Positions 41,714 to 64,000 of a stretch of DNA of 64,000 nucleotides are shown here, piece by piece. The DNA is from Phallusia mammillata (taxonomy: Eukaryota). The position numbers and the translations under genes were made by a program. Numbering within the stretch: the stretch's first letter is position 1; every line of letters begins with the position of its first letter. The stretch lies in NCBI GenBank assembly GCA_965637545.1, contig OZ281500.1, forward strand, positions 8,680,001 through 8,744,000. Reading direction: 5' to 3'. Below the pieces are notes generated by a model, which ran no database searches, had not been told where the DNA came from, and saw only the letters and a program-made list of their open reading frames with translations.

Positions 41714-42245
41714 AATCAACATTTGTGTTCAAAAAAGAGCAAAACACCTTTGAACACTTTTTTACTAATCTCATATTAGGGAGAGTCCCTACAAGACGAA
41801 TGAGAGACGCCGTTTTGGTTCCCTTTTTTACATAAAAGAACTAATTCCATTTTAATTGCGGAAGTATGGTCGCCAAATGTCAGTAGTAGGTGTTATTTCA
41901 AACACTTCTTATTTGTGTGTTATAACGGCAACATTGGTGGTGCAAAAATGTGAAACAAGTTGTATTCTTTTTGCAAACTAACATATTGAGGTGTTACTTT
42001 GGTTAGTTTTTGAACGTTACTGGTGTATTATTGTATGAATTTTATTGGAGCAGATATGAGGAATAAAACTGACAGACTTACTCCAATAAGGCATATTACC
42101 AACAATTCCATGCTTTTCTAAAATCGTAAAGACTATGGCAACATAGTGCACCTCAATTTGAAAAACTTTAAATAATATGTTCAACCAAGTAACCAGTGCT
42201 GTTGTATCAAGTTATATAGAGTCGGCTGCTACTATTGTAATAAAA

Positions 42246-42820
42246 ATGCCGCTGCCAGTTGCACAAGTCATGGAGGCCATCAGCACCATTGCCAGGGAGG
42301 AAAACATAAGAGTTTCTGTGACCCAGGCTCTTCGAGGTGGTGCATTGGCTGGTGGTGGGGCTGTGGTTGGTGCACTTTTGGGTGGACCAGCTGGAATGGC
42401 AATAGGTACAGTGATAAAAATTTAAATCTTACCTTAAACCATAATGACAATCAGACTTAAGATAAGTTGTATGGTGGTGTTTTGAGGCCAAACTTTTACC
42501 TAACCTTCTTATTTGTTTTTGAAGATATACAACTAATTTTTAAGTGTGTATGTTCTGCAGGTGGAACAGTGGGTTCCATTTTAGGTGCCACAACCTCCAA
42601 GGACTTCAAACCCCTAATAACTGTCCTGAAAGAGCTTCCAGCACACAAGCAACAAGAACTTGCTGACAAAATACAAAATGTTGTGGCCTCCTTCAACCCT
42701 CAAGATGCTTTAATGTTGGTGGCTTTGATCCAGGGAAGCGCAAGTGTACATCAAGAAGTTTTTGGGGCAGTTAGAGACTATTTTGATAAAAACTTGAGTG
42801 GAATGACTGTAGAGTGTTAA
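42246..42820 (+). CDS. C19orf12: C19orf12 homolog (glycine-zipper membrane protein), 2 coding exons (42246-42405, 42561-42820)
   Basis: The protein reads GGALAGGGAVVGALLGGPAGMAIG|GTVGSILGA..SKDFKPLITVLKELPAHKQQEL...DALMLVALIQGSASVHQE, matching recalled C19orf12. Confidence 0.92.
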
Positions 42821-49650: not shown

Positions 49651-51490
49651 TCAACCAGTTACTTCCATATACAAAGTTTGTACTTCAGCTCCTCGTATTA
49701 ATGCCCTTTTCATACATTTTTCAACATGCTCTTCTTGAAGCGTTACACCACCTGACCAAAACATAGTAGATTTACAGTGCAAATAAAAGTATATTACTGA
49801 CATACCTGGTCGTTCCATATAAATAATGCGACCTTGCTGGTCTGTGACTATTGTCAACTGCCCTTCAGTTAGTTCTTCCTCCATTGAGGTTGGGTCCGCA
49901 ATAATGTTTGACCTACAATTTCATAGATTTTTAAGAATCAGATTTTTTGCTGCTTTAAGAAGTCTAAATTTCTACACTGTTCAAGAACTTACAACACACC
50001 TATCAAATACACGGAACGTTGTTGAAACAGGACAGCTACAAAGCTTTAATGTGGCAGTGCATTTCAGATTAACTTCAACACTTTCACATTCCTCATTAAT
50101 TTTCACTTCAGGCAGTTTGACTGAAAAAAGTACATATTATCATTGAGCTTTAGGGTTTACAAAAATGTGTCAACTAACCAGTGTTAAACAAATAAAGGGA
50201 AGTTACTGATACTGGTGTGATAAAAACAAATATTACCATTCTGCAGTGCTGCCATCAATGATATTACTGATGCATCGACAATGTTTCCATCATAGTCAAT
50301 ACAGATTAAATCACAATATAGAATCCAAACCAATTTGTCATTCTCCACACAAAGATCATCAAGACATATTAAATTGGTGCTAAAGGCAATGTATATTTTT
50401 ATTTTAATCTGTAGTCTTATAAAGCTTATTTATCATTACCTTTGTATCAAGTTATCTAAAAACTTTGTGACCACTTGTGCTTGATCGCATGGTGGACCAG
50501 GTTTAAATTTCGGAGAACAAAGAGGTGAAAGTTCAACATTGGGAACTACATATCAGAGAAGCATTAAAAACAATAAACTGTACAAGGATGATATCATACC
50601 AACGATCCCCTTTCCAGGATGACTAGCATTCGGTTCAGTTAGTTCAGCTTTTATTCCACACACCACAGTAGTATTTCCAACTTTGACAAGTGAAGAGCCA
50701 CTGGCAGTGGATATTGACCCTTAACGAAAAAAGGTATTGCTAAAGAAATATTGCCACCAGAATTTATCACCAGTATGCAATATATTGTATCAGTCTTTTT
50801 AGTTTTTAATAATATAAATGATATCATTTATCGAGCAATCCATTTAAATCTTACTACTATATTGTTTAGCAGCCCTTAATTGGTTGAAAAAAAATAAGTT
50901 AAAAGCACAGTTTCAAAAAACATTTTTTTAACCAAAACGTAAGAAACACTTAAACAATGACTTTCACGACTTAACAATCTTACCAACATTTAAAACCATT
51001 GGTCTCATTTCCATCAGCATTCTTCCATCAGGTCGGATTCCTTCTTTCTGTAAAGAAAAACAAATCTTTTTTCACCTGAACAAAAAAAAATCAAGCTAAA
51101 TTTATCAACATTTCATAAAACAACTGTCATTCAACTGTTGTTAGTGTTAGGAACAGGTTGGCTTTTTGATATTGCATTAAGCCATAAAATAATGTAAGTA
51201 CCAAATGTAAATGTAATATGATCTATGTTTTAAAAAAACTGGAAACGCCCATAACACAAACATGTGCACACTTTTATTTCTTACCAAATGCAATTTGTAG
51301 AAATCATCAGATTTATCATTTCTATAAAAAACAAAATGGGAAAAGTAATACTATATATTTTAGGTAACTAAAGTGTTCACTGTTCACCAGCTATAAAATT
51401 ACATGAGCTAGTCACACTTTATAAAAGTAGACTTTACATTTCAGTAGTTACATATCTTTACTTCTGCACTTACATGAGGAAATTCATCAT
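49651..51490 (-). CDS. EXOSC8: Exosome complex component RRP43 (RNase PH-like)
   Basis: Exons read [96 protein letters not shown] and [12 protein letters not shown]. The exact first exon or exons are uncertain. Confidence 0.93.
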
Positions 51491-51949
51491 AAATAATTTT
51501 GGTTTCCAATTAAATAGTGTTCAGGGTATCTGTCCAAATAAACATGCAAACTGCTTTAAGCAAACTTACCAATTTCGCGGTATATATTATGCATCTAATT
51601 TGACATAATATCATGCATACTATTATCATTAGAACATTAAACAGTCGATTGTTAACTTTGTGTATGTTACGTGTCACGTGTGCATACGTTTGTTTAATAC
51701 ACAAACAATATTGAAAATACAGTATAGTTTAAAAAATCAACCCCTACAGTCGCAGTTGTCCAGTGCTTGATTTGATTACTGTTCGCATAATCCCAGTGTT
51801 TAAAACCCTAGGCCAAACAGAACCAACCGGTAACAATATGAAATGTATGTTTTTGAATTTCTGAATTCTGATCAGTAAAATTTAGGGTAGAACTGGCAGT
51901 TTTGGAAACTACAGCATAATGTGTTTAGGTAGTTGTCGCAAGATTATTT

Positions 51950-52250
51950 AATTTCTATTAACCAGCAGAGTGCTGATTAAGCCCTAATATTGTCATCGAT
52001 TTCGCAAGCCGTGTACGTGACGTAGCGAACGAACTAAGAACAAAGCATTAAGCAACCGACTTCGATCTGTGATGCTGTTGCGTTGCGCAACAACGTCCTA
52101 ACTGCTTTTCTGTTGCGTCACAGCTTTTTTCGTCATGTGACGTGTTGCACCAGAAAAGTCGCGATGTCTGGAGAAAAAACGCAAAGCAAACGTCAAAGAC
52201 GCAATGCATTGTGGGAAGAAAAACTGTCCAATGAGATGGAAGTAACATCA
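51950..52250. promoter_or_regulatory. CpG-richer island upstream of EXOSC8; candidate bidirectional promoter
   Basis: Local CpG enrichment with repeated (g)tgacgt motifs (~52017, ~52137). It lies just upstream of the EXOSC8 start and of plus-strand splice-like signals. Confidence 0.35.
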
Positions 52251-52427
52251 AGCAACTGCGAGTTTAATGTTAATCCGCTATAATGTTTCCACAATATTTC
52301 ATAATTTAATGCAAATTTGAAAAACAAATTTTCTACGGCTTAACTTAAAAATTGCTTTTGTGTTTCTTTTGCATACAATTGTGCTGAAAAACACTTTATA
52401 ATGTACAAAGATATCATTTTATATCAG

Positions 52428-53532
52428 GCGGATGAATACATGACGTCACACTGTTTACCACTATGGGAACTGTTCATCTTCAGTGAAGCAACCCGAATCC
52501 ACCATTTCTGCTGTTGCAAGTTGTGAATAGGTTGTTGGTTTTCGTCTTTGTAGTTGTTGTCGGTCAGCTAACAAACCAAGTGAAAGATGTTGTCAAGGAA
52601 TTGAATTAGAGGAATATTATTATCACGGCTTGAGAATGGTACAGGTTTGCGTGACTTGGTGTAATGGCTAATAGGCTTGCGCTGCGCTTGTGTACGGATC
52701 GCCAGAATTTGCTCTTTTCTTGAGTGCTTGACACCAAAGATAACAAGATAAATGGTAAGCAGTGTTTATGATATGATTTAAACTGTGTAATTTTTAAACC
52801 TTCGCTTTGGAACTTTTTTTAAACAAAAATAACTTAATTCTTAGGTAACTTGAATGAATGGAGAATTGCCCTTTTATTTTCTTGTCTACGTGGTGTTAGT
52901 TGCTTAGCTTCAAACATACGTACTAGGCGATCAGGGCAGGGACTGTGTGTCTGTATTCCAGTTTACCATAAGAAAGGCAAGATTTGCATGTAAAGGAAGC
53001 AGTCCAACTTTTTTGTCATTGAGGTAAAAACGATTTTTACTTTGTGTTCTTTAAGGAGTTTAGCTTTTAGACTTGTACATCTGTGTCACACAGTTTACTC
53101 ACTGTGTTTGTAAGAAAAACTGATGTAGTCATAATTCAATATTTTTGTCATATTGCAATAGACTATCAAATGGTGATTTCGATACAAAACCTATATGTTC
53201 ATGAACAAACTAGGCAGCCTAGTTTTAACAACTTGTAAAAAAAATATATCTTAAACAAAATTACACCAAACAACAGCCAAAAATTTTTAAATGTGCTTTA
53301 ACAAACATTTTGGTTTCAGTGTTTGCGGCTTTGTCTGTCTGGTTTGGTTTTCTTGAAGAAACAACTGTAGATGTTTTTTTTCTCATGGCATTGGTCATTA
53401 ATACTAGTGGAAAAAATCAGTCCTGAATTCAGCAGTATATGTTCAACATCACACAAAGATTCTGAAGAAACACATGTCATCACATTAGCTTTATGCAACA
53501 CAAAGAGTTTTGTCACATTGCAAATGCTAAAG
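52428..53532 (+). ncRNA. Candidate exons of a spliced non-coding transcript heading toward the tandem array
   Basis: AG|...|GT-bounded blocks at 52428-52754 (donor gtaagc), 52845-53023 (gtaaaa) and 53320-53532 (gtatct). No continuous ORF runs across them. There is no expression evidence. Confidence 0.25.
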
Positions 53533-54499
53533 GTATCTTTGGTAGTATGCACATTGGAAATTTGTTCTAAAGAAGGTCGGTAAAATTTACCAATGTTGGA
53601 AATTCCAAAAAAAAACTAGAATCCTCTTGGGTTGCATTATTGAAACAACATGTTTTTTGTGTGGAGTCAAACATTGATTATGCAAGTTAAAAATATTTAC
53701 ATTTGATTGTTTTTGAAGTGCTGATTTATTTCCATTACATAAGATACCATAGCACACATTTTTAACTTGTCCTTTCAACAAAAGCCTATAAATTTCACTC
53801 ACTACAAATCTTATGTCTGTTACTTGAAAAATGTACAAAATTTGTTTTAGGTTGTATTGAAAGAAATTGTTCTTGCATAGTGGTCAAACACTTTTCAGTG
53901 ATATTAGAAATCCTGTTTTAAATTACAAAACAACTAAATGCTTAATACAATGTGATGATGGTAGGTGAATGTCATTCGGTACTATGTGTGGTCATTTTAT
54001 GTTTTAAGGACATAACAGGCTTTGATTGCAGACGAACATTGCTTCCGTTTTATTTTATCAGTGAAAAGTCATTCTTCTGTATGTATGGAGGTCGTAAGCA
54101 TAAAGATTCAATACTTTTCTTCTGCTTGCAATTGTGTACGTTTTAGGGTGGTAACTCTTATTGCAGGAATAAAAACGTGGAAGATGCAATCGGCTTTCCC
54201 TGTGCACAAAACTTAGGTCTAAAAATGTCAGCAACTGCAGGAAATAGAATTATTCTCCCAAATGCGAAATCTAATTTATTCAAAGAAAATAAAACAAATT
54301 AACAACCAAACAAATGGTAATATGTATACAATGTATGAAGGTATGAGAAACCCTATCTGTGTTGCAGGATTGAGTGGAGTTTTTCAGTGAAACGTATGTT
54401 GTGTCAACATTTTTGTGGTGGAAAAATGGTGCTCAGATAATATTTGTAAGTGTGGGATTAAATTGTTTTGGACAGTAGCAGAAGTTGTGTGATACCTTA

Positions 54500-57400
54500 A
54501 TCAACCTGTGTTCAGACTTTTGAATGTTCAGTAGGCAAAAATCATATGTTACAGGCATAATAAAGTGATCTGCAATAATTTTTTCCACTGGCTTAAAAAA
54601 AGATTCACCAAGACAAGAGCAAGGCACATGCAAAGTATGCTTCACTGTCCCTACTATCCCAAACAGACTGTGCTTTAAAGCGAGGATTGACGAAATGTGA
54701 ACCACAACTATCGTACCACCCCCCCAAAAAACACTCAAAATTCAGCAGTTTGGTTTTTAACATAGTGTGCCAAATGTAGAATGTAAGAAATATTTTAACA
54801 GGTATTTCCACAAGCAAGGATGTGTGAAAATGTTTCATATCAAGGTTTGGCGGTCAGATTCGATCTCTGTTGCTTAGCTGCTTTGCAGAAATTCTTTTCT
54901 TGCCACATTGTTAACAGGCTGCATGAGAGTTGTGCTACAGCATTTATCAAACAAGCCACTCCAAAGAGTAACCACTGGTAAAAGTGTTAGTCTGTAAGAT
55001 GTAATATTAAGGCAGGTCCAATAATTGTGTTTCAGGCTTAAACTCATTGAGAACCTGTGCTCGGAAGCAATTAATACTTTAAACCGAACAACTATGTACC
55101 TCTGCTTATACAAGCCATGATTTTAATCAAGACATTGATTCTACATTAAGACACACAAATAGGTTTCAGTTGTTGCCTATCTATGTTCAACATGTAGCTG
55201 TTTTTTTGTTTAAACATAAAATATGTTCCGTAGGCAATAACCATATGTTACAGGCATGATACAGTTCTTTGCATTCAATTTTCGTTACACTGACTGAATA
55301 AACATCGCCCCAAACAAGAGCAATGCGCCTGAGAAGTATGCTTCACTCCAGATTGTTATCGGTTCCAGGAAGTCTAAACTTAAAAGTGTTTTGTGACTGC
55401 GTGTAGGGAAGGTTGTGGTTCTTGTTGCAGGGCCTGTTTTCTATAGGATGAAACTGATCTCTTTATCCCCAACAAACTTCAAATGTAAACAAGGAACCAG
55501 CGAAAGTGTGCATCACAACTACAGCGCTAAGTACATTTGTACTACTTGTAACACCCTAAAATAACATTCAAAATTTTCCAGTCTGTTGTGTCAATATACT
55601 GCGCTAGATGTAGGATGTCAGAAATATTTTACAGACATTTCCGAAAGCCCGACCGCTGGTGTGTGAAATGGTTTCGTATCGAGGTTTGCCCGTCAGGTTT
55701 TGGTTTCTGGTGTTTTGGAATTAGCCGGTTTGTAGAAAATATTTGCTCGCCATTTTGTTTACAGGTTGCATGAGAGTTGTGCTACAGCATTTATCAAGAA
55801 ATCTACTTTAAAGTGTAACCACTGGTAAAAAGCATTGAATGAAATATTTAGGTAGGAACAATAACTGTGTTTCAGGGTTAAACTCTCCCCATTGGCAAAA
55901 GTACGGTCCCTGTGGTAAAGACATGCAAAGTTGCTTACGAAGACTTTCACCATATTTTTTTCATTGGCACCTGCCCGAAAATGGAATCGTTGTGCTTTAA
56001 CATACACATCATTCAAAACATTGTGGTTTGATCTTGCACTTTTGCACATTGTATGTATTTTGGGTATACATATTTTTTTTCAAATCCTGTTTTAAATGCA
56101 CATCGCTGTTAAAATGAAGTGAGATTTACTATTTGTACCCCTAATTGTGATAGGTAGGACAGTAACCATGTATTACAGGTATAATACAGACAACTACAAG
56201 TGATTCCACTAAACGCAGCGAAAGAAAACACTCGGTGTCTGCGATATAATTTGGTAAAGGTGGATGAAAAATTGAGTCCAGATAACTGTTGGCAACCTGA
56301 CCGCATTGTTGTTACTTTGTTAAGTTGTGATTTTAGTAGGTTAGTAACTCTTGTTTCAGAACTAATTTTCAATCTGTTGAAAGTATTTTTACAATTGCGA
56401 CTCCTGCACTCTGGTGATTGAAAATGCGCTTGAGATGATGAGATAAGACGCAACAACTACTCGCTCAAATCCATATAAATTGTAATGTTATGTAACTAGA
56501 TGTAGGATATCCCAACATATTTTGCAGATATGCATTATCCAAACTCATTACACGACTCTGGGAAAGCATTATACTAGGAAGTTTGCTAACCTAAAGATAT
56601 GTTTTCATACTTTTAATGGTTCCAAGCTTATAGGATTTATGAATGTGGTTAGTTTGCGCAATACTTGCACTCTTTTTTTGTGTGATGTGTAAAATATCCG
56701 ATATAGTGTGAAACTGTGTAATGACTGTTGTGAAAATGTTTTGGTAGGGCCAATGACTGTGTTTCAGGCATCAACTATTCCGGTTTGCGAGAACCTGTGC
56801 TTTGCAGCCAACTATGTACCTCTGCTTACTTGAGCCAGGATTGCGATCAAGACTTTGATTCTGCACTAAGACACTCACATATCAATAGGTTTTAATTGTT
56901 GCCAATCTATGTTCAACACGAGACTGTATTTTTTGTTTTTACGTAAAATATTTTCTGTACGCAATAACCATATGTTACAGGCATGATACAGTTTTCTGCA
57001 GTCACTTTTTTCCCTCTGACTGAATAAACATCGCTCCAAACACGAGCAATGCGCCTGAGAAATATGCTTCACTCCAGATTGTTATCGGTCCCAGGGAGTC
57101 CAGGGAGAAGTGTTTTGTAACTGTGTGTAGGAAAGGATGTGGTTCTTGTTGCAGGCCTTTTTTTGTATAGGATGAAACTGATCTATTTATCCCCAACAAA
57201 CTGATTGTAAGCACGGAATTGGCAAAGTGTGCACCACAACTACAGCGCTAAGTACATTTGTACCACCCAAAAAAGGGTCCAAAATTTCCAGTCTGTTATG
57301 TAAATATACTGTGCTATATGTAGGAGGTCAGAAATATTTTTACAGGCATTTTCAAAAGCCGGACAGCGCATGTGTGGAAATATTTCATATTGAGGTTTGC

Positions 57401-60400
57401 CCGTCTAGTTTTGGTTTCTGATGCTTTGCAATTACGCGATTTGTAGAAAATATTTGCTCGCCATCTTGTTTACAGGTTTCATGAAAGTTGTGCTACAGAA
57501 TTTATCAAGAAAGCTACTTCAAAGTGTAACCACTGGTAAAAAGCCTTGAATGAAATATTTAGGTAGGAGCATTAACTGTGTTTCAGGGTTAAACTCTCCC
57601 CATTGGCAAAGGTATTGTTTCCGTGATAAAGACATGCCAAGTTACTTATGAAGCGTAATATCCCTTTCACCATACTTTTTTCCTTGACACCTACCTGAAA
57701 ATGGAATCATTGCACTATAACATACACATCATTCAAAACATTGTGGTTTGATCTTGCACTTTTGCACATTGTACGTATTTTGGGTATACATGTTTTTTTC
57801 AAATCCTTTTTTTAATGCACATCGGTGTTAAAATGAAGTAAGGTTTACTATTTGTTCCCCTAATTGTGCTAGGTAGGGCAGTAACCATGTATTACAGGTA
57901 TAATACAGACAACTACAAGTGATTCCACTAAACGCCGCGAAAGAAAACACTCGGTATCTGCGATATAATTTGGTAAAGGTGGATGAAAAATTGAGTCCAG
58001 ATAACTGTTTTCAACCTGACTTCATTGTTGTTACTTTGTTAAGTTTTGATTCTGGTAGGTTAGTAACTCTTGTTGCAGAACTAGGACATGTTTCTACAGT
58101 TGCGACTCCTGGGCACTGCTGATCGAAAATGCGCTTGAGATGTTGAGATAAAACGCAACAACTACTCACTCAAATCCATATAAATTGTAATGTTAAGTAA
58201 CTGGATGTAGGATATCCCAACATATTTTGCAGATATGCATTATCCAAACTCTTTACACGATTGTCGGAAAACATTACATTAGGAAGTTTGCTAATCTAAA
58301 GGTTTGTTTTCATACTTTTGAAGATTCTAAGCTGATAGGACTTACGAATGTGTTTACTTTGCGCATGCTTCTTGCAGTCATTTTTGTGTGATGTGTAAAA
58401 TGTCCGATATATTGTGAAACTGTGTAATGACTGGTGTGAAAATGTTTTGGTAGGGCCAATAACTGTGTTTCAGGCATCAACTATTCCGGTTGCGAGAACC
58501 TGTGCTTTGCAGCAATTAATACTAACAACTATGTACCTCTGCTTACTTGAGCCAGGATTGCGATCAAGACTTTGATTCTGCACTAAGACACTCACATATC
58601 AATAGGTTTCAATTGTTGCCAATCTATGTTCAACACGAGACTGTATTTTTTGTTTTTGCGTAAAATATGTTATGTAGGCAATAATCATATGTTACAGGCA
58701 TGATACAGTTTTCTGCAGTAACTTTTTTCCCTCTGACTGAATAATTATCGCCCCAAACAAGATCAATGCACCTGAGAAATATGCTTCACTCAGATTGTTA
58801 TCGGTTCCAGGGAGTCCAGGGAGAAGTGTTTTGTAACTGTGTGTAGGAAAGGATGTGGTTCTTGTTGCAGGGCTTTTTTTGTATAGGATGAAACTGATCT
58901 ATTTATCCCCAACAAACTGTGATTGTAAGCACGGAATTGGCAAAGTGTGCACCACAACTACAGCGCTAAGTACATTTGTACCACCCCAAATAATGCTCCA
59001 AAATTTCAAGTTTGTTATGTAAATATACTGTGCTATATGTAGGAGGTCAGAAATATTTTTACAGGCATTTTCAAAAGCCGGACAGCGCATGTGTGGAAAT
59101 ATTTCATATCGAGGTTTGCCCGTCAGGTTTTGGTTTCAGATGCTTTGGAATTACCCGGTTTGTAGAAAATATTTGTTCACAAGTTGCATAAGAGTTTTGC
59201 TACAGCATTTATCAAGAGAGCCACCACTGGTAAAGAGTGTTAGATGAAATATTTAGGTAAGAACATTAACTGTGTTTTAGGGTTAAACTCATCCCGTTGG
59301 CAAAGATATTGTTTCAGCGATAAGGATGTGCGAAGTTACTACCGAAGCATAGAATCCCTTTCACCTAATTTTTTCTGTTCAAGAAATCAAATCATTGCGC
59401 CTTAACAGATACATCATTTGACACATTCTGGTTTGATCTTGCACATTGTATGTATTTTGGGGATTCTTATTTTTTTTCAAATCCTATTGTTAGTGCACAT
59501 TTACGTTAAAATGAAGTAAGGTTTACTATGCGTTTTCTTAATTGTGCTAGGTAGGGCAGTAACCATGTATTACAGGTATAATACAGACAACTACAAGTGA
59601 TTCCACTAAACACGCTGAAAGAAAATTAAATGACTCGATATCTGCGATTTGATTTTGTAAAGGTGGATAAAAAATTGAGCCAAGATAAATATTTGCAACC
59701 TGACTGCATTGTTGGTACTTTTTTAAGTTTTGATTGTGGTAGGTTAGTAGCTGTTGTTGCAGAACTTATTTTCAATCGGTTGGAGCCATTTTACAATTAT
59801 GAGTCTTACACACTGCTGATCAAAAAAGCGCTTGAGATGATGAGATAAATTCATATAAATTGTAATGTTCAGTCACTAGATGTAGGATATCGCAACATAT
59901 TTTGCAGATATGCATTATCCAACCTTTTTACACGACTGTCGGAAAACATTACATTAGGAAGTTCACCAATCTAAAGGTTTGATTCATACTTTTTATGATT
60001 CGATGCTTTAATGGATTTGTGAATGTGTTTACTTTGCGCAATACTTCTTGCACTCATTGTTTCGGGGACGTGTGAAATGTTTGATAAATGGTGAAGCTGT
60101 GTAATGACTGGTGTGAAAATATTATGGTAGGGCCAATAACTGTGTTTCAGGCTTCAACTTTTCCAGTTTGCCAAGACCTGTGCTTTGCAGCAAATAATAC
60201 TCTTAACAACTACGTTCCTCCACTTACATGAGCCCTGATTGTGATCAAGGCATTGATACTGCATTAAGACACACATACACCAATAGGTTTCAATTGTTTC
60301 ACATCTATTTTAACATGTGGCTGTTTTTTTTTGTTCTTACATAACATATGTTTTGTAGGCAATAACCATATGTTACAGGCATGACACAGTTCTCTGCATT

Positions 60401-63400
60401 AACTTTTTTTCCACTGACTGAATAAACATCGCCCCAAACAAGATCAATGCGCCTGAGAAATATGCTTCACTCCAGATTGTTATCGGTTCCAGGGAGTCAA
60501 AACTTAAAAGTGTTTTGTAACTGTGTGTAGGGAAGGTTGTGGTTCTTGTTGCAGGGCCTGTTTTCTATAGGATGATCTCTTTATCCCTAACAAACTTCGA
60601 TTGTAAGCAAGGAATCGGCGAAGTGTGAACCTCCACTACAGCGCTAAGTACATTTGTACTACTTGTATCACCCCGAAATAACGCTCGAAAATTTCCAATC
60701 TGTTATGTAAATATACTGTGCTAGATGTAGGATGTCAAAAATATTTCACAGGCATTTCTCAATACCCGACCGCTGATGTGTGAAAACGTTTCATATCGAG
60801 GTTTGCCCGTCAGGTTTTGGTTTCTGATGTTTTGGAATTACCCGGTTTGTAGAAAATATTTGCTCGCCATCTTGTTTACAGGTTGCATGAGAGTTGTGCT
60901 ACAGAATTTGTCATGAAAGGCACTTCAACGAGTAACCACTGGTAAAATGCGTTAGATGAAATATTTAGGTAGGAACATTAACTGTGTTTCAGGATTAAAC
61001 TCTTCCCATTGTCAAAGATTGTCTCAGCAATAAGGATGTGCCAAGTTATTACCGAAGCATTGAATCCCTTTTTCCCTATTTTTTCCATTCGATCTGGCCC
61101 TAAAATTGAATCATTGCGCCTTAACATATTTATCATTCAAAACATTGTGGTTTGATCTTGCACATTGTATGTATAATATTTTGGCTGTATATATTTTTTT
61201 CAATTTCTGTTTTTAATGCACTTTGGTGTTAAAATGAAGTAAATAAGGTATGCTATATGTTCTTTTAATTGTGCTAGGTGGGGCATTAACCATGTATTTC
61301 AGGTATAATACAGACAACTACAAGTGATTGCACTAGACAACATGAAAGAAAATTACATGACTAGGTATCTGCGATTTAATTTGGTAAAGGTGGATGAAAA
61401 ATTAAGCCAAGATAAATATTTTCAACCTGTCTGGATTGTTGTTACTTTGTTAAGTTTTGATTGTAAGTCCTACACACTGCTGGTCATAAATGCGCTTAAG
61501 ATGATGAATCAAAATGCAACAACTACTCACTCAAATCCATATAAATTGTAATGTTAAGTAACTAGATGTAGGATATCCCAACATATTTTGCAGATATGCA
61601 TTATCTAAACTCATTGCAAGGCTGTCAGAAAACATTACATTAGGAAGTTTGCCAATCTAAAGGTTTGTTTTCATACTTTTTATGATTCGCTGCTTAATAA
61701 GATTTGTGAATGTGTTTACTTTGCGCAATACTTTTTGCACTCATTTTTTTCGGGGACATGTGGAATGTCTGATAAATTGTGAAGCTGTGTAATGACTGGT
61801 GTGAAAATATTATGGTAGGGCCAATAACTGTGTTTCAGGCTTCAACTTTTTCCGGTTTGCTAAGACCTGTGCTTTGCAGCAAATGATACTCCTAACAACT
61901 ACGTTCCTCTGCTTACATGAGCCCTGATTGTGATCAAGACATTGATACTGCATTAAGACACACATACACCAATAGGTTTCAATTGTTTCACATCTATTTT
62001 AACATGTGGCTGTTTTTTTTTGTTCTTGCATAACATGTTTTGTAGGCGATAACCATATGTTACAGGCATGATACAGTTCTCTGCAGTAACTTTTTTCTTC
62101 CACTGACTGAATAAACATCGCCCCAAACAAGATCAATGCACCTGAGAAATATGCTTCACTCCAGATTGTTATCGATTCCAGGGAGTCAAAACTAAAAAGT
62201 GTTTTGTAACTGTGTGTAGGGAAGGTTGTGGTTCTTGTTGCAGGGCCTGTTTTCTGTAGGATGAAACTGATCTCTTTATCCCAAACAAGCTGCGTAAGCA
62301 AGGAATTGGCGAAATGTGCACCACAATTACAACGCTAAGTACATTTGTACTACTTGTAACACCCAAAATACAGCTCGGAAAATTTCCAGTCTGTTATGTA
62401 AATATACTGTGCTAGATATAGGATGTCAGAAATATTTTTGCAGGCATTTCCAAAAGCCTGACCGCTTATGTGTGAAATTGTTTTCTGTGGAGGTTTGCCA
62501 GTCAGGTTTTGGTTTCTGGTGTTTTGGAATTAGCCGGTTTGTAGAAAATATTTGCTTGCCATCTTGTTTACAGTTTGCATGAGAGTTGTGCTACAGCATT
62601 TATCAAGAAAGCCACTTCAAAGAGTAACCACTGGTAAAATGCGTTAGATGAAATATTTAGGTAGGAATATTAACTGTGTTTCAGGGTTAAACTCTCCCTA
62701 CTGGCAAAGATATTGTCTCCGCGATAAGGAATCCCGCCACCATACTTTTTTACCTTCAAAACCAAATGGTATGAAATGACCAATGTCTTCTCCACCTGCT
62801 ACATTTCATTAGTTGTGTTGGTTTATTGGATTAAACGGTTGACCTCCAAACGCCTGGCATAAAATCGAATGATTGCGCCTTTACATACACATCACTGAGA
62901 ACATTGTGGTTTGATCTTGCACTTTTGCACATTGTATGTATTTTGGCTATACAGATTTTTTCCAAATCTTGTTTTTAATGCACATCGGCGTTAAAATGAA
63001 ATAAGGTTTACTGTTTGTTCCCCTAATTGTGCTAGGTAGGGCAGTAACCATGTATTACAGGTATAACACAGACAACTACAAGTGATTCCACTAAACGTTG
63101 CGAATAAAAATTACTTGACTCTGTATCTGCGATTTAATTTGGTGAAGGTGGATGAAAAATTGAATCAAGATAACTGTTTTCAACCTGACTGCATTGTTGT
63201 TACTTTGTTAACTTTTGGTTTTAGTTGGTTAGTAACTTTTGTTTCAGAACTAATTTTCAATCTGTTGGGTGTGTTTTTACAATTGCGAGTCCTGCACACT
63301 GCTAATCAAAAATGTGTCTGAGATGATGAGATGAAATACAACAACTACCCACTCACATCTATATAAATTGTAATGTTAAGTAACTAGATGTAGGATATCC

Positions 63401-64000
63401 CAACATATTTTGCAGATATGCATTATCTAAACTCATTGCATGGCTGTCGGAAAACATTACATTAGGAAGTTCGCAATCTAAAGGTTTGATTTCATTCTTT
63501 TTATGATTCGCTGCTTAATAAGATTTGTGAATGTGTTTACTTTGCGCAATACTTCTTGCACTCATTGTTTCGGGGACGTGTGAAATGTCTGATAAATTGT
63601 GAAGCTGTGTAATGACTGGTGTGAAAATATTATGGTAGGGCCAATAACTGTGTTTCAGGCTTCAACTTTTCCGGTTTGCCAAGACCTGTGCTTTGCAGCA
63701 AATAATACTCCTAACAACTACGTTCCTCCGCTTACATGAGCCATGATTGTGATCAAGACATTGATACTGCATTAAGACACACATACACCAATAGGTTTCG
63801 ATTGTTTCACATCTATTTTAACATGTGGCTGTTTTTTTTTTTTTGTTCTTACATAACATATGTTTTGTAGGCAATAACCATATGTTACAGGCTACAGTAC
63901 ATGATACAGTTCTCTGCATTAACCTTTTTCTTCCACTGACTGAATAAACATCGCTCCAAACAAGATCAATGCGCCTGAGAAATATGCTTCACTCCAGATT
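54500..64000. repeat. Higher-order tandem array of at least 11 ~850-bp monomers, arranged as ~1.7-kb A/B dimers and continuing past the window end
   Basis: The anchor tgtgttt(c/t)ag occurs with its (c/t)ag at 55033, 55873, 56765, 57584, 58471, 59278, 60148, 60990, 61836, 62682 and 63656 (spacing 807-974). The anchor gaggtttgcc occurs at 55681, 57392, 59111, 60798 and 62490 (spacing 1687-1719). Confidence 0.95.

What the first reader, a model, noticed from the sequence alone, without database searches (positions are those of the whole stretch)
54500..64000. A 1.7-kb higher-order tandem array whose most conserved features are splice-like signals, not an ORF
Seen: at least 11 monomers of ~850 bp alternate between two strongly diverged types (A and B). 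The blocks still shared by A and B end in plus-strand acceptor-like motifs: aaccat(a/g)t(g/a)ttacag|G, ctagatgtaggat...atttt(a/g)cag| and ataactgtgtttcag|G. A tidy mini exon-intron set recurs in the dimers, for example exon 55635-55683 (49 nt), exon 55765-55824 (60 nt), a 51-nt intron gtaaaa...tttcag, then an exon from 55876. Spliced in phase this gives a consensus like AFPKARPLMCENVSYR-GCMRVVLQHLSRKPLQRVTT-GLNSPHWQRYC, but most copies carry stops, at different positions. Inference: this is not an ordinary satellite. It may be an amplified, spliced non-coding locus (a host for intronic small RNAs or a piRNA source) or a decaying array of a small multi-exon gene.
Basis: partly seen in the sequence, partly recalled or inferred. 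Interest (0 to 1): 0.75.

Follow-up and report, generated by a model that had tools for sequence, protein, structure and literature searches.

The report
Transcribed non-coding macrosatellite with splice-like motifs
A 16-kb, one-locus tandem repeat in a sea-squirt-type genome codes for no protein and shows no splicing in the RNA-like contigs examined, yet evolution has protected about 70 same-strand copies of a short element that looks like a splice signal, so it most likely works as a protein-binding repeat RNA rather than as a gene or plain junk.

Summary
A tandem array runs from window 54510 past the window edge to about 70858. It holds one partial unit, nine 1.7-kb dimers and a stub, and occurs only at this locus of the 240-Mb genome. 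Each dimer is an A half plus a B half that share only three short colinear blocks.

No protein is encoded. pN/pS is 0.8-0.95 in every frame tested, there are no Pfam hits or homologues, and LRR-like patterns are not enriched.

Seven or eight plus-strand elements per dimer, GTAGG-N14-20-CAG (24-28 nt), vary far less than the rest: 15% against 34% of columns (p=1.6e-7). The same holds among the youngest copies. The proposed "introns" are better conserved than the "exons".

Splicing is not supported. Contigs from four probable RNA runs cover the array colinearly with the genome, at roughly a tenth of the depth of a non-coding unit just upstream. None shows an intron-sized joint.

My best reading (about 0.4) is a long unspliced repeat RNA whose paired UAGG...CAGG elements bind hnRNP A/B-type or 3'-splice-site proteins, laid out like Drosophila hsr-omega. 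Rivals are a weakly spliced lncRNA, a DNA-level element, and a neutral repeat.

The parts
54510..64000 (+). Tandem array. It continues beyond the window to about 70858 (L001:1-6858). Total about 16.3 kb: one partial A monomer, nine 1.7-kb A+B dimers and a stub. It is unique to this locus.
   Evidence: single-locus status
54510..55012 (+). d0, an old diverged partial A monomer at the array edge (profile positions 216-858, about 70-78% identical to other A halves).
55003..56734 (+). Dimer d1 (A half about 55003-55870, B half about 55871-56734). The next dimers in the window start at 56735, 58441, 60118, 61806 and 63626.
55230..55253 (+). Element M2 in d1: GTAGG...TAAC...TGTTACAG|G, 24 nt.
55403..55430 (+). 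Element M3 in d1, 28 nt.
55610..55634 (+). Element M4 in d1, 25 nt.
55684..55764 (+). It begins with an invariant donor-like GAG|GTTTGC and is GU-rich. Conservation is 0.92, higher than the flanking 'exons'.
55825..55875 (+). Conservation is 0.91. An RNA-like contig spans it unspliced.
   Evidence: (X15 contig 55772-56037)
56154..56178 (+). Element M6 in d1, preceded by ATAGGTAGG at 56150. Other copies have TGTGCTAGGTAGG here.
56336..56359 (+). Element M7. It meets the pattern only in d1-d3, has changed in d5 and lies in a stretch deleted in d4 and d9, so it is not constrained.
56502..56527 (+). Element M8 in d1, 26 nt. It lies in the best-conserved 30-nt window of the unit (0.989).
56744..56767 (+). 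Element M1 (in d2), 24 nt.
56200..56421 (+). Longest recurrent open frame (about 70-84 codons in most copies). It is not under coding constraint (pN/pS 0.95) and has no family or homologue.
52908..54509 (+). Single-copy unit directly upstream with no long ORF. One high-depth contig covers it in each of three runs (depth 38-94). My back-calculation puts their left ends near 52913-52922. Their right ends are at 54289, 54393 and 54731. Strand is inferred, not shown. An AATAAA sits at 54288-54293. This is the probable proximal part of the same transcription unit.

Best explanation
The array is a locus-private, non-coding macrosatellite built by nested tandem duplication. A sub-repeat of about 170-380 nt carrying one short element was multiplied fourfold into a monomer of about 850-900 nt. 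That monomer doubled into an A+B dimer of 1.7 kb, and the dimer was amplified to about 9.5 copies, the middle four recently.

The array is transcribed, most likely on the plus strand, as a continuation of the non-coding unit that ends just upstream. It persists as unspliced RNA at roughly a tenth of that unit's level.

What selection keeps is a 24-28-nt element present about 70 times in one orientation: a UAGG core, a GU/U-rich tract (often with a TAAC), and CAG|G.

I infer that these elements act in the RNA as multivalent binding sites for hnRNP A/B-type proteins, which bind two YAG cores, or for proteins that bind 3' splice sites. They would be decoy splice signals. The locus would then work as a protein-sequestering or scaffolding repeat RNA, in the manner of Drosophila hsr-omega.

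Shown: the array and its hierarchy, its single-locus status, the absence of coding constraint, the motif constraint, and colinear contigs across the candidate introns. Inferred: that the runs are RNA, the transcribed strand, the link to the upstream unit, and any protein binding or function.
For: Structure and uniqueness: searches give the hierarchy. Searches show that the array and both flanks are single-locus.

There are no Pfam hits and no homologue.

Constraint on the element: identity 0.942 against 0.848, with 1 of 1758 circular shifts reaching it. Variable columns are 15% against 34% (p=1.6e-7), and 1.1% against 6.7% among the 95-99% identical recent copies (p=0.0014). This holds for each base class and after removing CpG columns. 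All eight paralogous classes keep a GTAGG-to-CAG span of 24-28 nt.

Strand bias: GTAGG occurs 63 times on plus and 7 on minus. TAGG occurs 113 times on plus and 25 on minus.

Transcription without visible splicing: runs with only 20-32 Mb of contigs hold 22-49% of the stretch's sampled words. The single-copy upstream unit sits at depth 38-94, which low-coverage DNA could not give. Array contigs of 170-350 nt are colinear with the genome across the candidate introns. The only joints are one unit long. Depth in the array falls together with depth in the upstream unit across the four runs.

Precedent: hsr-omega has a unique proximal part, then more than 5 kb of locus-private tandem repeats. The nonamer ATAGGTAGG and its variants TGTGCTAGG, TTAGGTAGG and CTAGGTAGG are the conserved feature and are bound by hnRNP A1 homologues (10.1101/695486). 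The array holds 23 of exactly these nonamers on plus, none on minus, and only 1 in the 77.6 kb outside it. The two RRMs of hnRNP A1 bind a bipartite motif of two AG cores such as UUAGGUC and UCAG (PMC5503513).
Against: - No protein binding or localisation data exist. The hnRNP reading rests on motif resemblance noticed after the fact.
- The runs are only guessed to be RNA, contigs are unstranded, and contigs drop rare variants, so low-level splicing is not excluded.
- Donor-like sites (GAG|GTTTGC and CTG|GTAAAA) are also invariant or nearly so. That fits real splicing at least as well.
- Other conserved blocks lie outside the element, for example consensus 298-367.
- The spacer between the two cores is longer than the 9 nt studied for hnRNP A1.
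- No heat-shock element lies near the putative promoter.
- The constraint could also act at the DNA level.
- The substitution asymmetry that would indicate plus-strand transcription is only borderline (A>G 0.108 against T>C 0.071, p=0.051).
Confidence: 0.4

Rival explanations
1. A genuinely spliced long non-coding gene made of repeated mini exon-intron cassettes. The conserved acceptor- and donor-like sites are used, but the spliced product is rare, unstable or tissue-restricted, so assembled contigs show only the precursor.
For: Acceptor-like elements and two donor-like sites are among the best-conserved positions. Exon-like (49-87 nt) and intron-like (51-81 nt) spacings are plausible. The 3' part of the element closely resembles a real 3' splice site in this window, tgtgtatgttctgcag|G in the C19orf12-like gene. 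Earlier notes of this scan describe two other loci in the same genome as spliced non-coding mini-exon arrays. Those notes are leads only and were not tested here.
Against: No intron-sized joint appears in 160 laid contigs from four runs and four studies. Contigs cross 55825-55875, 55764/55765 and the d2 equivalents unspliced. Whole 'introns' are conserved, not just their ends (0.918 against 0.841 for 'exons', p=0.0027). Conservation downstream of the AG falls to background with no general second peak for donors.
Confidence: 0.25
2. The constrained elements act in DNA. The array would be a multi-copy binding platform for a sequence-specific factor (an insulator, enhancer or chromatin organiser, as with CTCF sites in the human DXZ4 macrosatellite), and its transcription would be incidental.
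For: A 24-28-bp element with two fixed cores and fixed spacing suits a multi-finger DNA-binding protein. The array lies between a divergent promoter region and the next gene. Constraint is shown but its level, DNA or RNA, is not.
Against: The element combines features typical of RNA signals: UAGG, a TAAC 12-13 nt before the AG in about half of the classes, a pyrimidine/GU tract and CAG|G. The array is represented in probable RNA runs. No known DNA motif was recognised.
Confidence: 0.15
3. A neutral macrosatellite. The uneven conservation comes from non-selective causes such as local mutation-rate differences, short conversion tracts or alignment anchoring, and the RNA signal is read-through noise from the upstream unit.
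For: Tandem arrays homogenise unevenly. CpG columns evolve faster (0.645 against 0.867), so mutation rate does vary along the unit. One element class (M7) has been lost or deleted in most copies. Array coverage is only about a tenth of the upstream unit.
Against: The depletion of variable sites holds within every base class and without CpG. It is seen at three time depths: A against B, the old dimers, and the recent copies. It peaks within 10 nt of the AG, far shorter than conversion tracts. Coverage persists at least 5 kb into the array, and about half of the words over 10 kb are held.
Confidence: 0.15
4. A decaying array of a small multi-exon protein-coding gene. This includes the suggestion from a neighbouring first-stage note of a dead LRR receptor-like gene.
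For: A frame of about 75 codons stays open in most copies.
Against: pN/pS is 0.82-0.95, no different from the other frames. An open frame of that length is expected about once per unit by chance (my estimate from stop frequency). Pfam finds nothing at E<=10 for ten ORFs, and there is no homologue by word search. No paralogue exists elsewhere in the genome at DNA or protein level. LRR-like patterns number 3-6 per frame against 5.6 +/- 3.0 in controls. Indels are mostly not multiples of three.
Confidence: 0.03

Closest known systems
Drosophila hsr-omega (93D) lncRNA gene
   Same: Both have a unique proximal transcribed part followed by many kb of tandem repeats found nowhere else in the genome. 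In both, the repeats diverge fast while a short UAGG-containing motif is kept. The array carries the very nonamers listed for hsr-omega (ATAGGTAGG, TTAGGTAGG, CTAGGTAGG, TGTGCTAGG), all on one strand. In both, the repeat part is seen as unspliced RNA at a lower level than the proximal part.
   Different: There is no sequence homology and the phylum is different. The unit is 1.7 kb with sub-repeats of about 250 nt, not 280 bp. The conserved element is longer and also includes a 3'-splice-site-like half. No heat-shock element was found. The omega intron, ORF-omega and mir-4951 landmarks were not found or not testable. Stress induction, nuclear speckles and hnRNP binding are untested.
Human macrosatellites (DXZ4, D4Z4 and similar) and repeat-rich lncRNAs (NORAD, FIRRE, PNCTR, satellite III transcripts). 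Named from my own knowledge, not checked here.
   Same: These have kb-scale units in a chromosome-specific tandem array, are transcribed, and carry repeated short protein-binding motifs as the functional payload.
   Different: There is no sequence relation. Several of those macrosatellites carry ORFs or CTCF sites. Here no ORF is constrained and the motif looks like an RNA splice signal.
Spliced non-coding mini-exon arrays noted elsewhere in this genome by this scan (s1-539812, s1-410958)
   Same: Same genome. They are multi-kb arrays of repeated exon-intron-like cassettes with kept splice signals and intron modules but unconstrained 'exons' (unverified notes).
   Different: Those are reported as spliced, with a GCAUG intron module. 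Here contigs are unspliced, GCATG is not notably enriched (3 per unit), and the array shares no detectable DNA similarity with any other locus.

Membership tests
Macrosatellite (locus-specific tandem array with a kb-scale unit) | Head-to-tail copies of a unit of about 1 kb or more | tested here: met
   Nine 1.68-1.83 kb dimers plus partial copies, spanning 54510-70858.
Macrosatellite (locus-specific tandem array with a kb-scale unit) | Confined to one or very few chromosomal loci, not dispersed | tested here: met
   Own-genome DNA and six-frame searches with three parts of the unit hit only this locus.
hsr-omega-type architectural repeat lncRNA | Unique proximal transcribed region followed by locus-private tandem repeats in one transcription unit | tested here: inconclusive
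   The layout fits, and one X15 contig runs from the unique part into the array (53501-54731). However, the runs are only presumed RNA, contigs are unstranded, and no single transcript was shown.
hsr-omega-type architectural repeat lncRNA | Conserved UAGG-type nonamers concentrated in the repeats | tested here: met
   23 of the listed nonamers lie on the plus strand of the array, 0 on minus, and 1 in the 77.6 kb outside. The GTAGG cores are constrained.
hsr-omega-type architectural repeat lncRNA | Stress inducibility, nuclear retention in speckles, and hnRNP binding | not testable with these tools
   No HSE lies near 52-53 kb. No expression-condition, imaging or CLIP data were available.
hsr-omega-type architectural repeat lncRNA | Sequence landmarks of the Drosophila gene (omega-intron junctions, ORF-omega, mir-4951) | tested here: not met
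   No Rfam family, miRNAs included, matches 50000-64000 at E<=1. The splice-junction landmarks were not compared, because their sequences were not at hand. Orthology is not claimed.
Spliced lncRNA or small-RNA host gene | Introns removed, shown by split reads or contigs at GT/AG pairs | tested here: not met
   No intron-sized joint in four runs. Contigs cross the candidate introns unspliced. This is contig-level evidence only, so rare splicing is not excluded.
Spliced lncRNA or small-RNA host gene | Recognisable small RNAs (snoRNA, miRNA, tRNA) in the introns | tested here: not met
   No Rfam hit, no ARAGORN hit, and no folding beyond shuffles: mean -12.9 against -14.0 kcal/mol for 90-nt windows.
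Protein-coding gene array or LRR gene relic | Purifying selection on a reading frame, or similarity to a protein family | tested here: not met
   pN/pS is 0.82-0.95. There is no Pfam hit and no homologue, and LRR patterns are at background.

The most novel reading that the evidence does not exclude
A chordate functional counterpart of Drosophila hsr-omega or of human satellite III transcripts: a single-locus repeat lncRNA that displays about 70 bipartite UAGG...CAGG decoy splice signals and buffers or organises hnRNP A/B-type splicing regulators in the nucleus. If so, the same solution (a unique 5' part, private tandem repeats and a UAGGUAGG-type motif) arose independently in flies and tunicates.
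Probability: 0.2. Interest if true: 0.8.

Novelty: new variant of a known kind. Interest (0 to 1): 0.55.

Why it matters
If the elements are RNA-level protein-binding sites, this would be one of very few repeat-built architectural RNAs outside flies and mammals. It lies in an ascidian-type genome, a group used for embryology, where FISH and knock-down or deletion tests are practical. It would also show convergent use of UAGG-type motifs in private tandem repeats.

The statistical result stands even without that reading. Purifying constraint falls on a short splice-like element inside an otherwise freely diverging macrosatellite, and it is visible at three time depths. That is a clean example of selection acting within a tandem array. 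Together with other arrays noted in this genome, it suggests that repeat-built non-coding genes may be a recurring feature of tunicate genomes.

Tried and rejected
- TRF missed the array because its period limit is 500.
- Rfam at E<=1 and ARAGORN found nothing.
- Pfam on ten ORFs from both strands found nothing meaningful.
- The word-based protein search with the best ORF found no candidate, not even the query itself, so it cannot be used to find the array in other species.
- An LRR pattern count in six frames against Markov controls showed no enrichment. This rejects the dead-LRR-gene idea from a neighbouring note.
- A C/D-box reading by eye found no properly spaced C and D boxes. I did not formalise this check.
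- The ultra-short intron reading, with GTAGG as donor and CAG as acceptor 24-28 nt apart, is rejected. The branch-like TAAC would lie only about 11 nt from the donor, and no contig omits the elements (table 4).
- The recursive-splice-site reading fits only M6, which has CAG|GTATAA.
- GCATG (an RBFOX-type motif) occurs 3 times per unit and is not notably enriched.
- A heat-shock element scan found none near the putative promoter, and window-wide counts are below chance.
- The first sliding-window folding script timed out. A lighter version showed no excess structure.
- The genome-wide pattern search for the long form of the element found it only in this array. My pattern was too strict to capture all classes.
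- Literature searches for tunicate macrosatellites and satellites returned nothing relevant.
Each exon alone is under 20 residues, too short for the protein tools, so the exons were analysed only by alignment and pN/pS.
Full report
**What is there**

The window is G000:C7:8680001-8744000 of a 240-Mb genome in 312 contigs. Earlier notes of this scan call it tunicate-type, and one names Phallusia mammillata. I did not verify the species.

Self-comparison shows a tandem array with a 1.68-1.83 kb period from about 54500 to the window edge. TRF missed it only because its period limit is 500. I fetched 30 kb more of the contig and built a profile from nine aligned dimers. With these, the array runs from 54510 to 70858 in window-continued coordinates. 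Its parts are:
- a partial, older A monomer (54510-55012);
- nine dimers starting at 55003, 56735, 58441, 60118, 61806, 63626, 65456, 67274 and 69109;
- an 80-nt stub.

The older dimers are 83-89% alike. Dimers d5-d8 are 95-99% alike, which marks a recent central amplification.

In the dimer consensus (1758 positions) the two halves share only three short colinear blocks: 1-59/849-907, 213-272/1146-1203 and 609-713/1516-1626, at 65-76% identity.

**It is private to this locus**

Own-genome searches with a 332-nt A block, a 661-nt B block and a translated ORF hit only this array. Both flanks are single copy, apart from a dispersed repeat about 1.5 kb downstream. This is a macrosatellite-type local array, not a dispersed satellite or a transposon family.

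**It does not code for protein**

- No ORF exceeds about 115 codons.
- The one frame that stays open in most copies (56200-56421 in d1) has pN/pS 0.95.
Stops are scattered among the copies.
- Ten ORFs from both strands have no Pfam family at E<=10.
- The word-based protein search found nothing.
- LRR-like patterns are at control level. This removes the dead-LRR-gene suggestion from a neighbouring first-stage note.

Reading the alignment, I found that each dimer carries seven to eight plus-strand elements of the form GTAGG-N14-20-CAG, 24-28 nt long. Four lie in A (M1-M4) and four in B (M5-M8), with M1 matching M5, M2 matching M6, and M4 matching M8.

All instances share T-N-T-R-T-T-N-C-A-G followed by G or A. 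About half have TAAC 12-13 nt before the AG. The 3' half looks like a genuine 3' splice site of this genome: tgtgtatgttctgcag|G in the C19orf12-like gene.

Constraint among six effectively independent dimers:
- Substitution-only pairwise identity is 0.942 inside the elements against 0.848 outside.
- Only one of all 1758 circular shifts of the mask, the true one, reaches that value.
- Conservation peaks in the 10 nt before the AG (0.961) and falls to background within about 25 nt on either side.
- Variable columns are 27/177 inside against 536/1581 outside (p=1.6e-7).
- Among the recent copies d5-d8 the counts are 2/177 against 106/1581 (p=0.0014).
- The effect holds for A, C, G and T separately and after removing CpG columns.

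The constraint therefore appears at three time depths: A against B, the old dimers, and the young dimers.

The proposed introns as wholes are better conserved than the proposed exons (0.918 against 0.841, p=0.0027).

One caveat applies. I first noticed the elements inside conserved blocks, so the definition is not fully blind.

**RNA evidence**

The run search returned several runs whose whole contig sets are only 16-33 Mb. These were flagged as "RNA?", which is a guess. Runs from five studies hold part of the stretch. The best of the guessed-RNA runs hold 22-49% of the sampled words of 54001-64000.

I laid four runs from four studies on 53501-59500, with these results:
- In three runs the single-copy stretch just upstream of the array is one high-depth contig (depth 94, 51 and 38). 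By my arithmetic from the contig lengths, its left end lies near 52913-52922. Its right ends are at 54289, 54731 and 54393.
- Such depth on single-copy DNA, in runs whose contigs total about an eighth of the genome, argues that these are expression libraries. This is my inference.
- Inside the array, contigs of 170-350 nt at depth about 3-20 are colinear with the genome. Examples are 54609-54949, 54921-55266, 55772-56037, 56185-56468, 57698-58009 and 59146-59459.
- These contigs cross the proposed 51-nt intron, the 55764/55765 acceptor and several elements without skipping them.
- The only joints are one repeat unit long (skip 1717, back 1714, back 1674). They carry extra letters and are most simply cross-copy or copy-number effects.
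- Bins of higher depth coincide with segments shared by many copies. At 55754 the contigs carry the base of the other copies, so these peaks are pile-ups.
- Array depth scales with the depth of the upstream unit across the four runs.

So the array is probably transcribed, together with or downstream of the upstream unit, and what accumulates enough to assemble is unspliced. Contigs cannot show strand or rare isoforms.

**No small-RNA signature**

There is no Rfam family at E<=1 and no tRNA. Windows of 90 nt fold no better than shuffles.

**Context**

- Upstream lies a minus-strand RNase-PH-domain gene (RNase_PH_C at 49654-49884). By my reading of the sequence it has an N-terminal exon near 51.0 kb, and a GC-rich region with CRE-like motifs, probably a divergent promoter, lies near 52.0-52.2 kb.
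- Downstream lie a Penelope-like retroelement (weak RT and GIY-YIG matches, just under Pfam's cut-offs; ext 79909-81012) and a plus-strand UBA-domain gene. Its first coding exon, near ext 84.9 kb, looks TDRD3-like to me by eye.
- The array is therefore intergenic, directly behind a 1.4-1.8 kb unit with no long ORF.
- Plus-strand composition (G>C, T>A) and a borderline excess of A>G over T>C (p=0.051) weakly suggest plus-strand transcription in the germ line.
- CpG columns evolve faster (0.645 against 0.867), which suggests methylation.

**Interpretation**

A dead gene is excluded as far as these tools can go. A plain neutral satellite is hard to square with constraint that is focal, independent of base class, and still visible in the youngest copies.

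Two live readings differ on whether the splice-like signals are actually used.
- *For real splicing:* both acceptor- and donor-like sites are kept, at sensible spacings. This scan has also noted two other arrays in the same genome as spliced non-coding mini-exon genes. Those notes are unverified and I did not test them.
- *Against real splicing:* every contig is unspliced, whole "introns" rather than only their ends are conserved, and there is no general donor peak downstream of the acceptors.

I therefore put first the reading that the elements work without being spliced, as RNA binding sites.

Each element carries two YAGG cores (UAGG and CAGG) at a fixed distance. UAGG is strongly strand-biased in the array (113 against 25). 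hnRNP A1's two RRMs are known to bind a bipartite pair of AG cores; their best ligands are UUAGGUC and UCAGUU, and the SELEX site is UAGGGA/U (PMC5503513).

The overall layout also matches a described gene type. Drosophila hsr-omega has a unique proximal region, then more than 5 kb of tandem repeats private to the locus. Those repeats diverge quickly but keep the nonamer ATAGGTAGG and its variants TGTGCTAGG, TTAGGTAGG and CTAGGTAGG, which are bound by hnRNP A1 homologues. Its long nuclear transcript carries the repeats (10.1101/695486).

Exactly these nonamers occur 23 times on the plus strand of the array, never on the minus strand, and once in the 77.6 kb around it. This resemblance was noticed after the fact. 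It concerns how the locus may work, not common descent. No heat-shock element was found, and nothing about binding, localisation or stress response could be tested.

**Verdict**

My estimates:
- protein-binding unspliced repeat RNA: about 0.4;
- weakly or conditionally spliced lncRNA: 0.25;
- DNA-level element: 0.15;
- neutral repeat: 0.15;
- gene relic: 0.03.

It is a new variant of a known kind, namely macrosatellite and repeat-built lncRNA loci. Interest is moderate to good, because the constraint signal is unusually clean and the hypothesis can be tested directly in an experimental chordate.

Noticed in passing
window 52908-54731: A single-copy unit with no long ORF is the most deeply covered stretch in three probable RNA runs (depth 38-94). 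By back-calculation from contig lengths, the contigs start within about 10 nt of each other near 52913-52922, just after an acceptor-like ttgcttag|c at 52907/52908. They end raggedly at 54289, 54393 and 54731. An AATAAA lies at 54288-54293. This is a candidate lncRNA, oriented away from the RNase-PH-domain gene.
   Followed up: partly
window 57517 (in dimer d2): A contig of run X15 leaves the array here and continues for 255 nt into a dispersed repeat with at least 98 copies in the genome. This is probably a polymorphic transposon insertion in that sample's array, or a chimeric contig.
   Followed up: partly
window 55563/57281, 58522/56809 and 59500/57827: Three joints are exactly one repeat unit long: a skip of 1717 seen in two studies, a step back of 1714, and a step back of 1674. 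Each carries 4-16 extra letters. They may reflect copy-number or haplotype variants of the array, or assembly-graph effects.
   Followed up: no
array consensus (all dimers): CpG columns are much less conserved than the rest (0.645 against 0.867). This suggests germ-line cytosine methylation of the array. From my own knowledge, methylation in ascidians mainly marks transcribed gene bodies.
   Followed up: no
window 49654-51053, minus strand: An RNase PH (exosome-subunit-like) gene, with an RNase_PH_C match at 49654-49884 and an N-terminal exon of the GIRPDGR type near 50990-51053. Its 5' end faces a GC-rich region with CRE-like motifs at about 52000-52150 that looks like a divergent promoter.
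   Followed up: partly
window 42177-42820, plus strand: A two-exon C19orf12-like gene (Pfam PF20721). Its intron 3' end, tgtgtatgttctgcag|G, served as a local example of a real acceptor.
   Followed up: partly
L002:4731-7012 (window-continued 78731-81012), plus strand: A Penelope-like retroelement: two long ORFs, the second (L002:5909-7012) with weak reverse-transcriptase and GIY-YIG matches just under Pfam's cut-offs.
   Followed up: no
L003:862-6243 (window-continued 84862-90243), plus strand: A UBA-domain gene with an N-terminal exon, RG-rich exons and a Tudor-like exon. By eye it looks TDRD3-like. It is the next gene downstream of the array.
   Followed up: partly
window 54140-54371: Degenerate look-alikes of the array elements lie in the unique sequence just before the array: ggtggtaactcttattgcag|g at about 54150 and ctatctgtgttgcag|g at about 54358. 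The array may have grown from local sequence, or older copies may extend further upstream.
   Followed up: no
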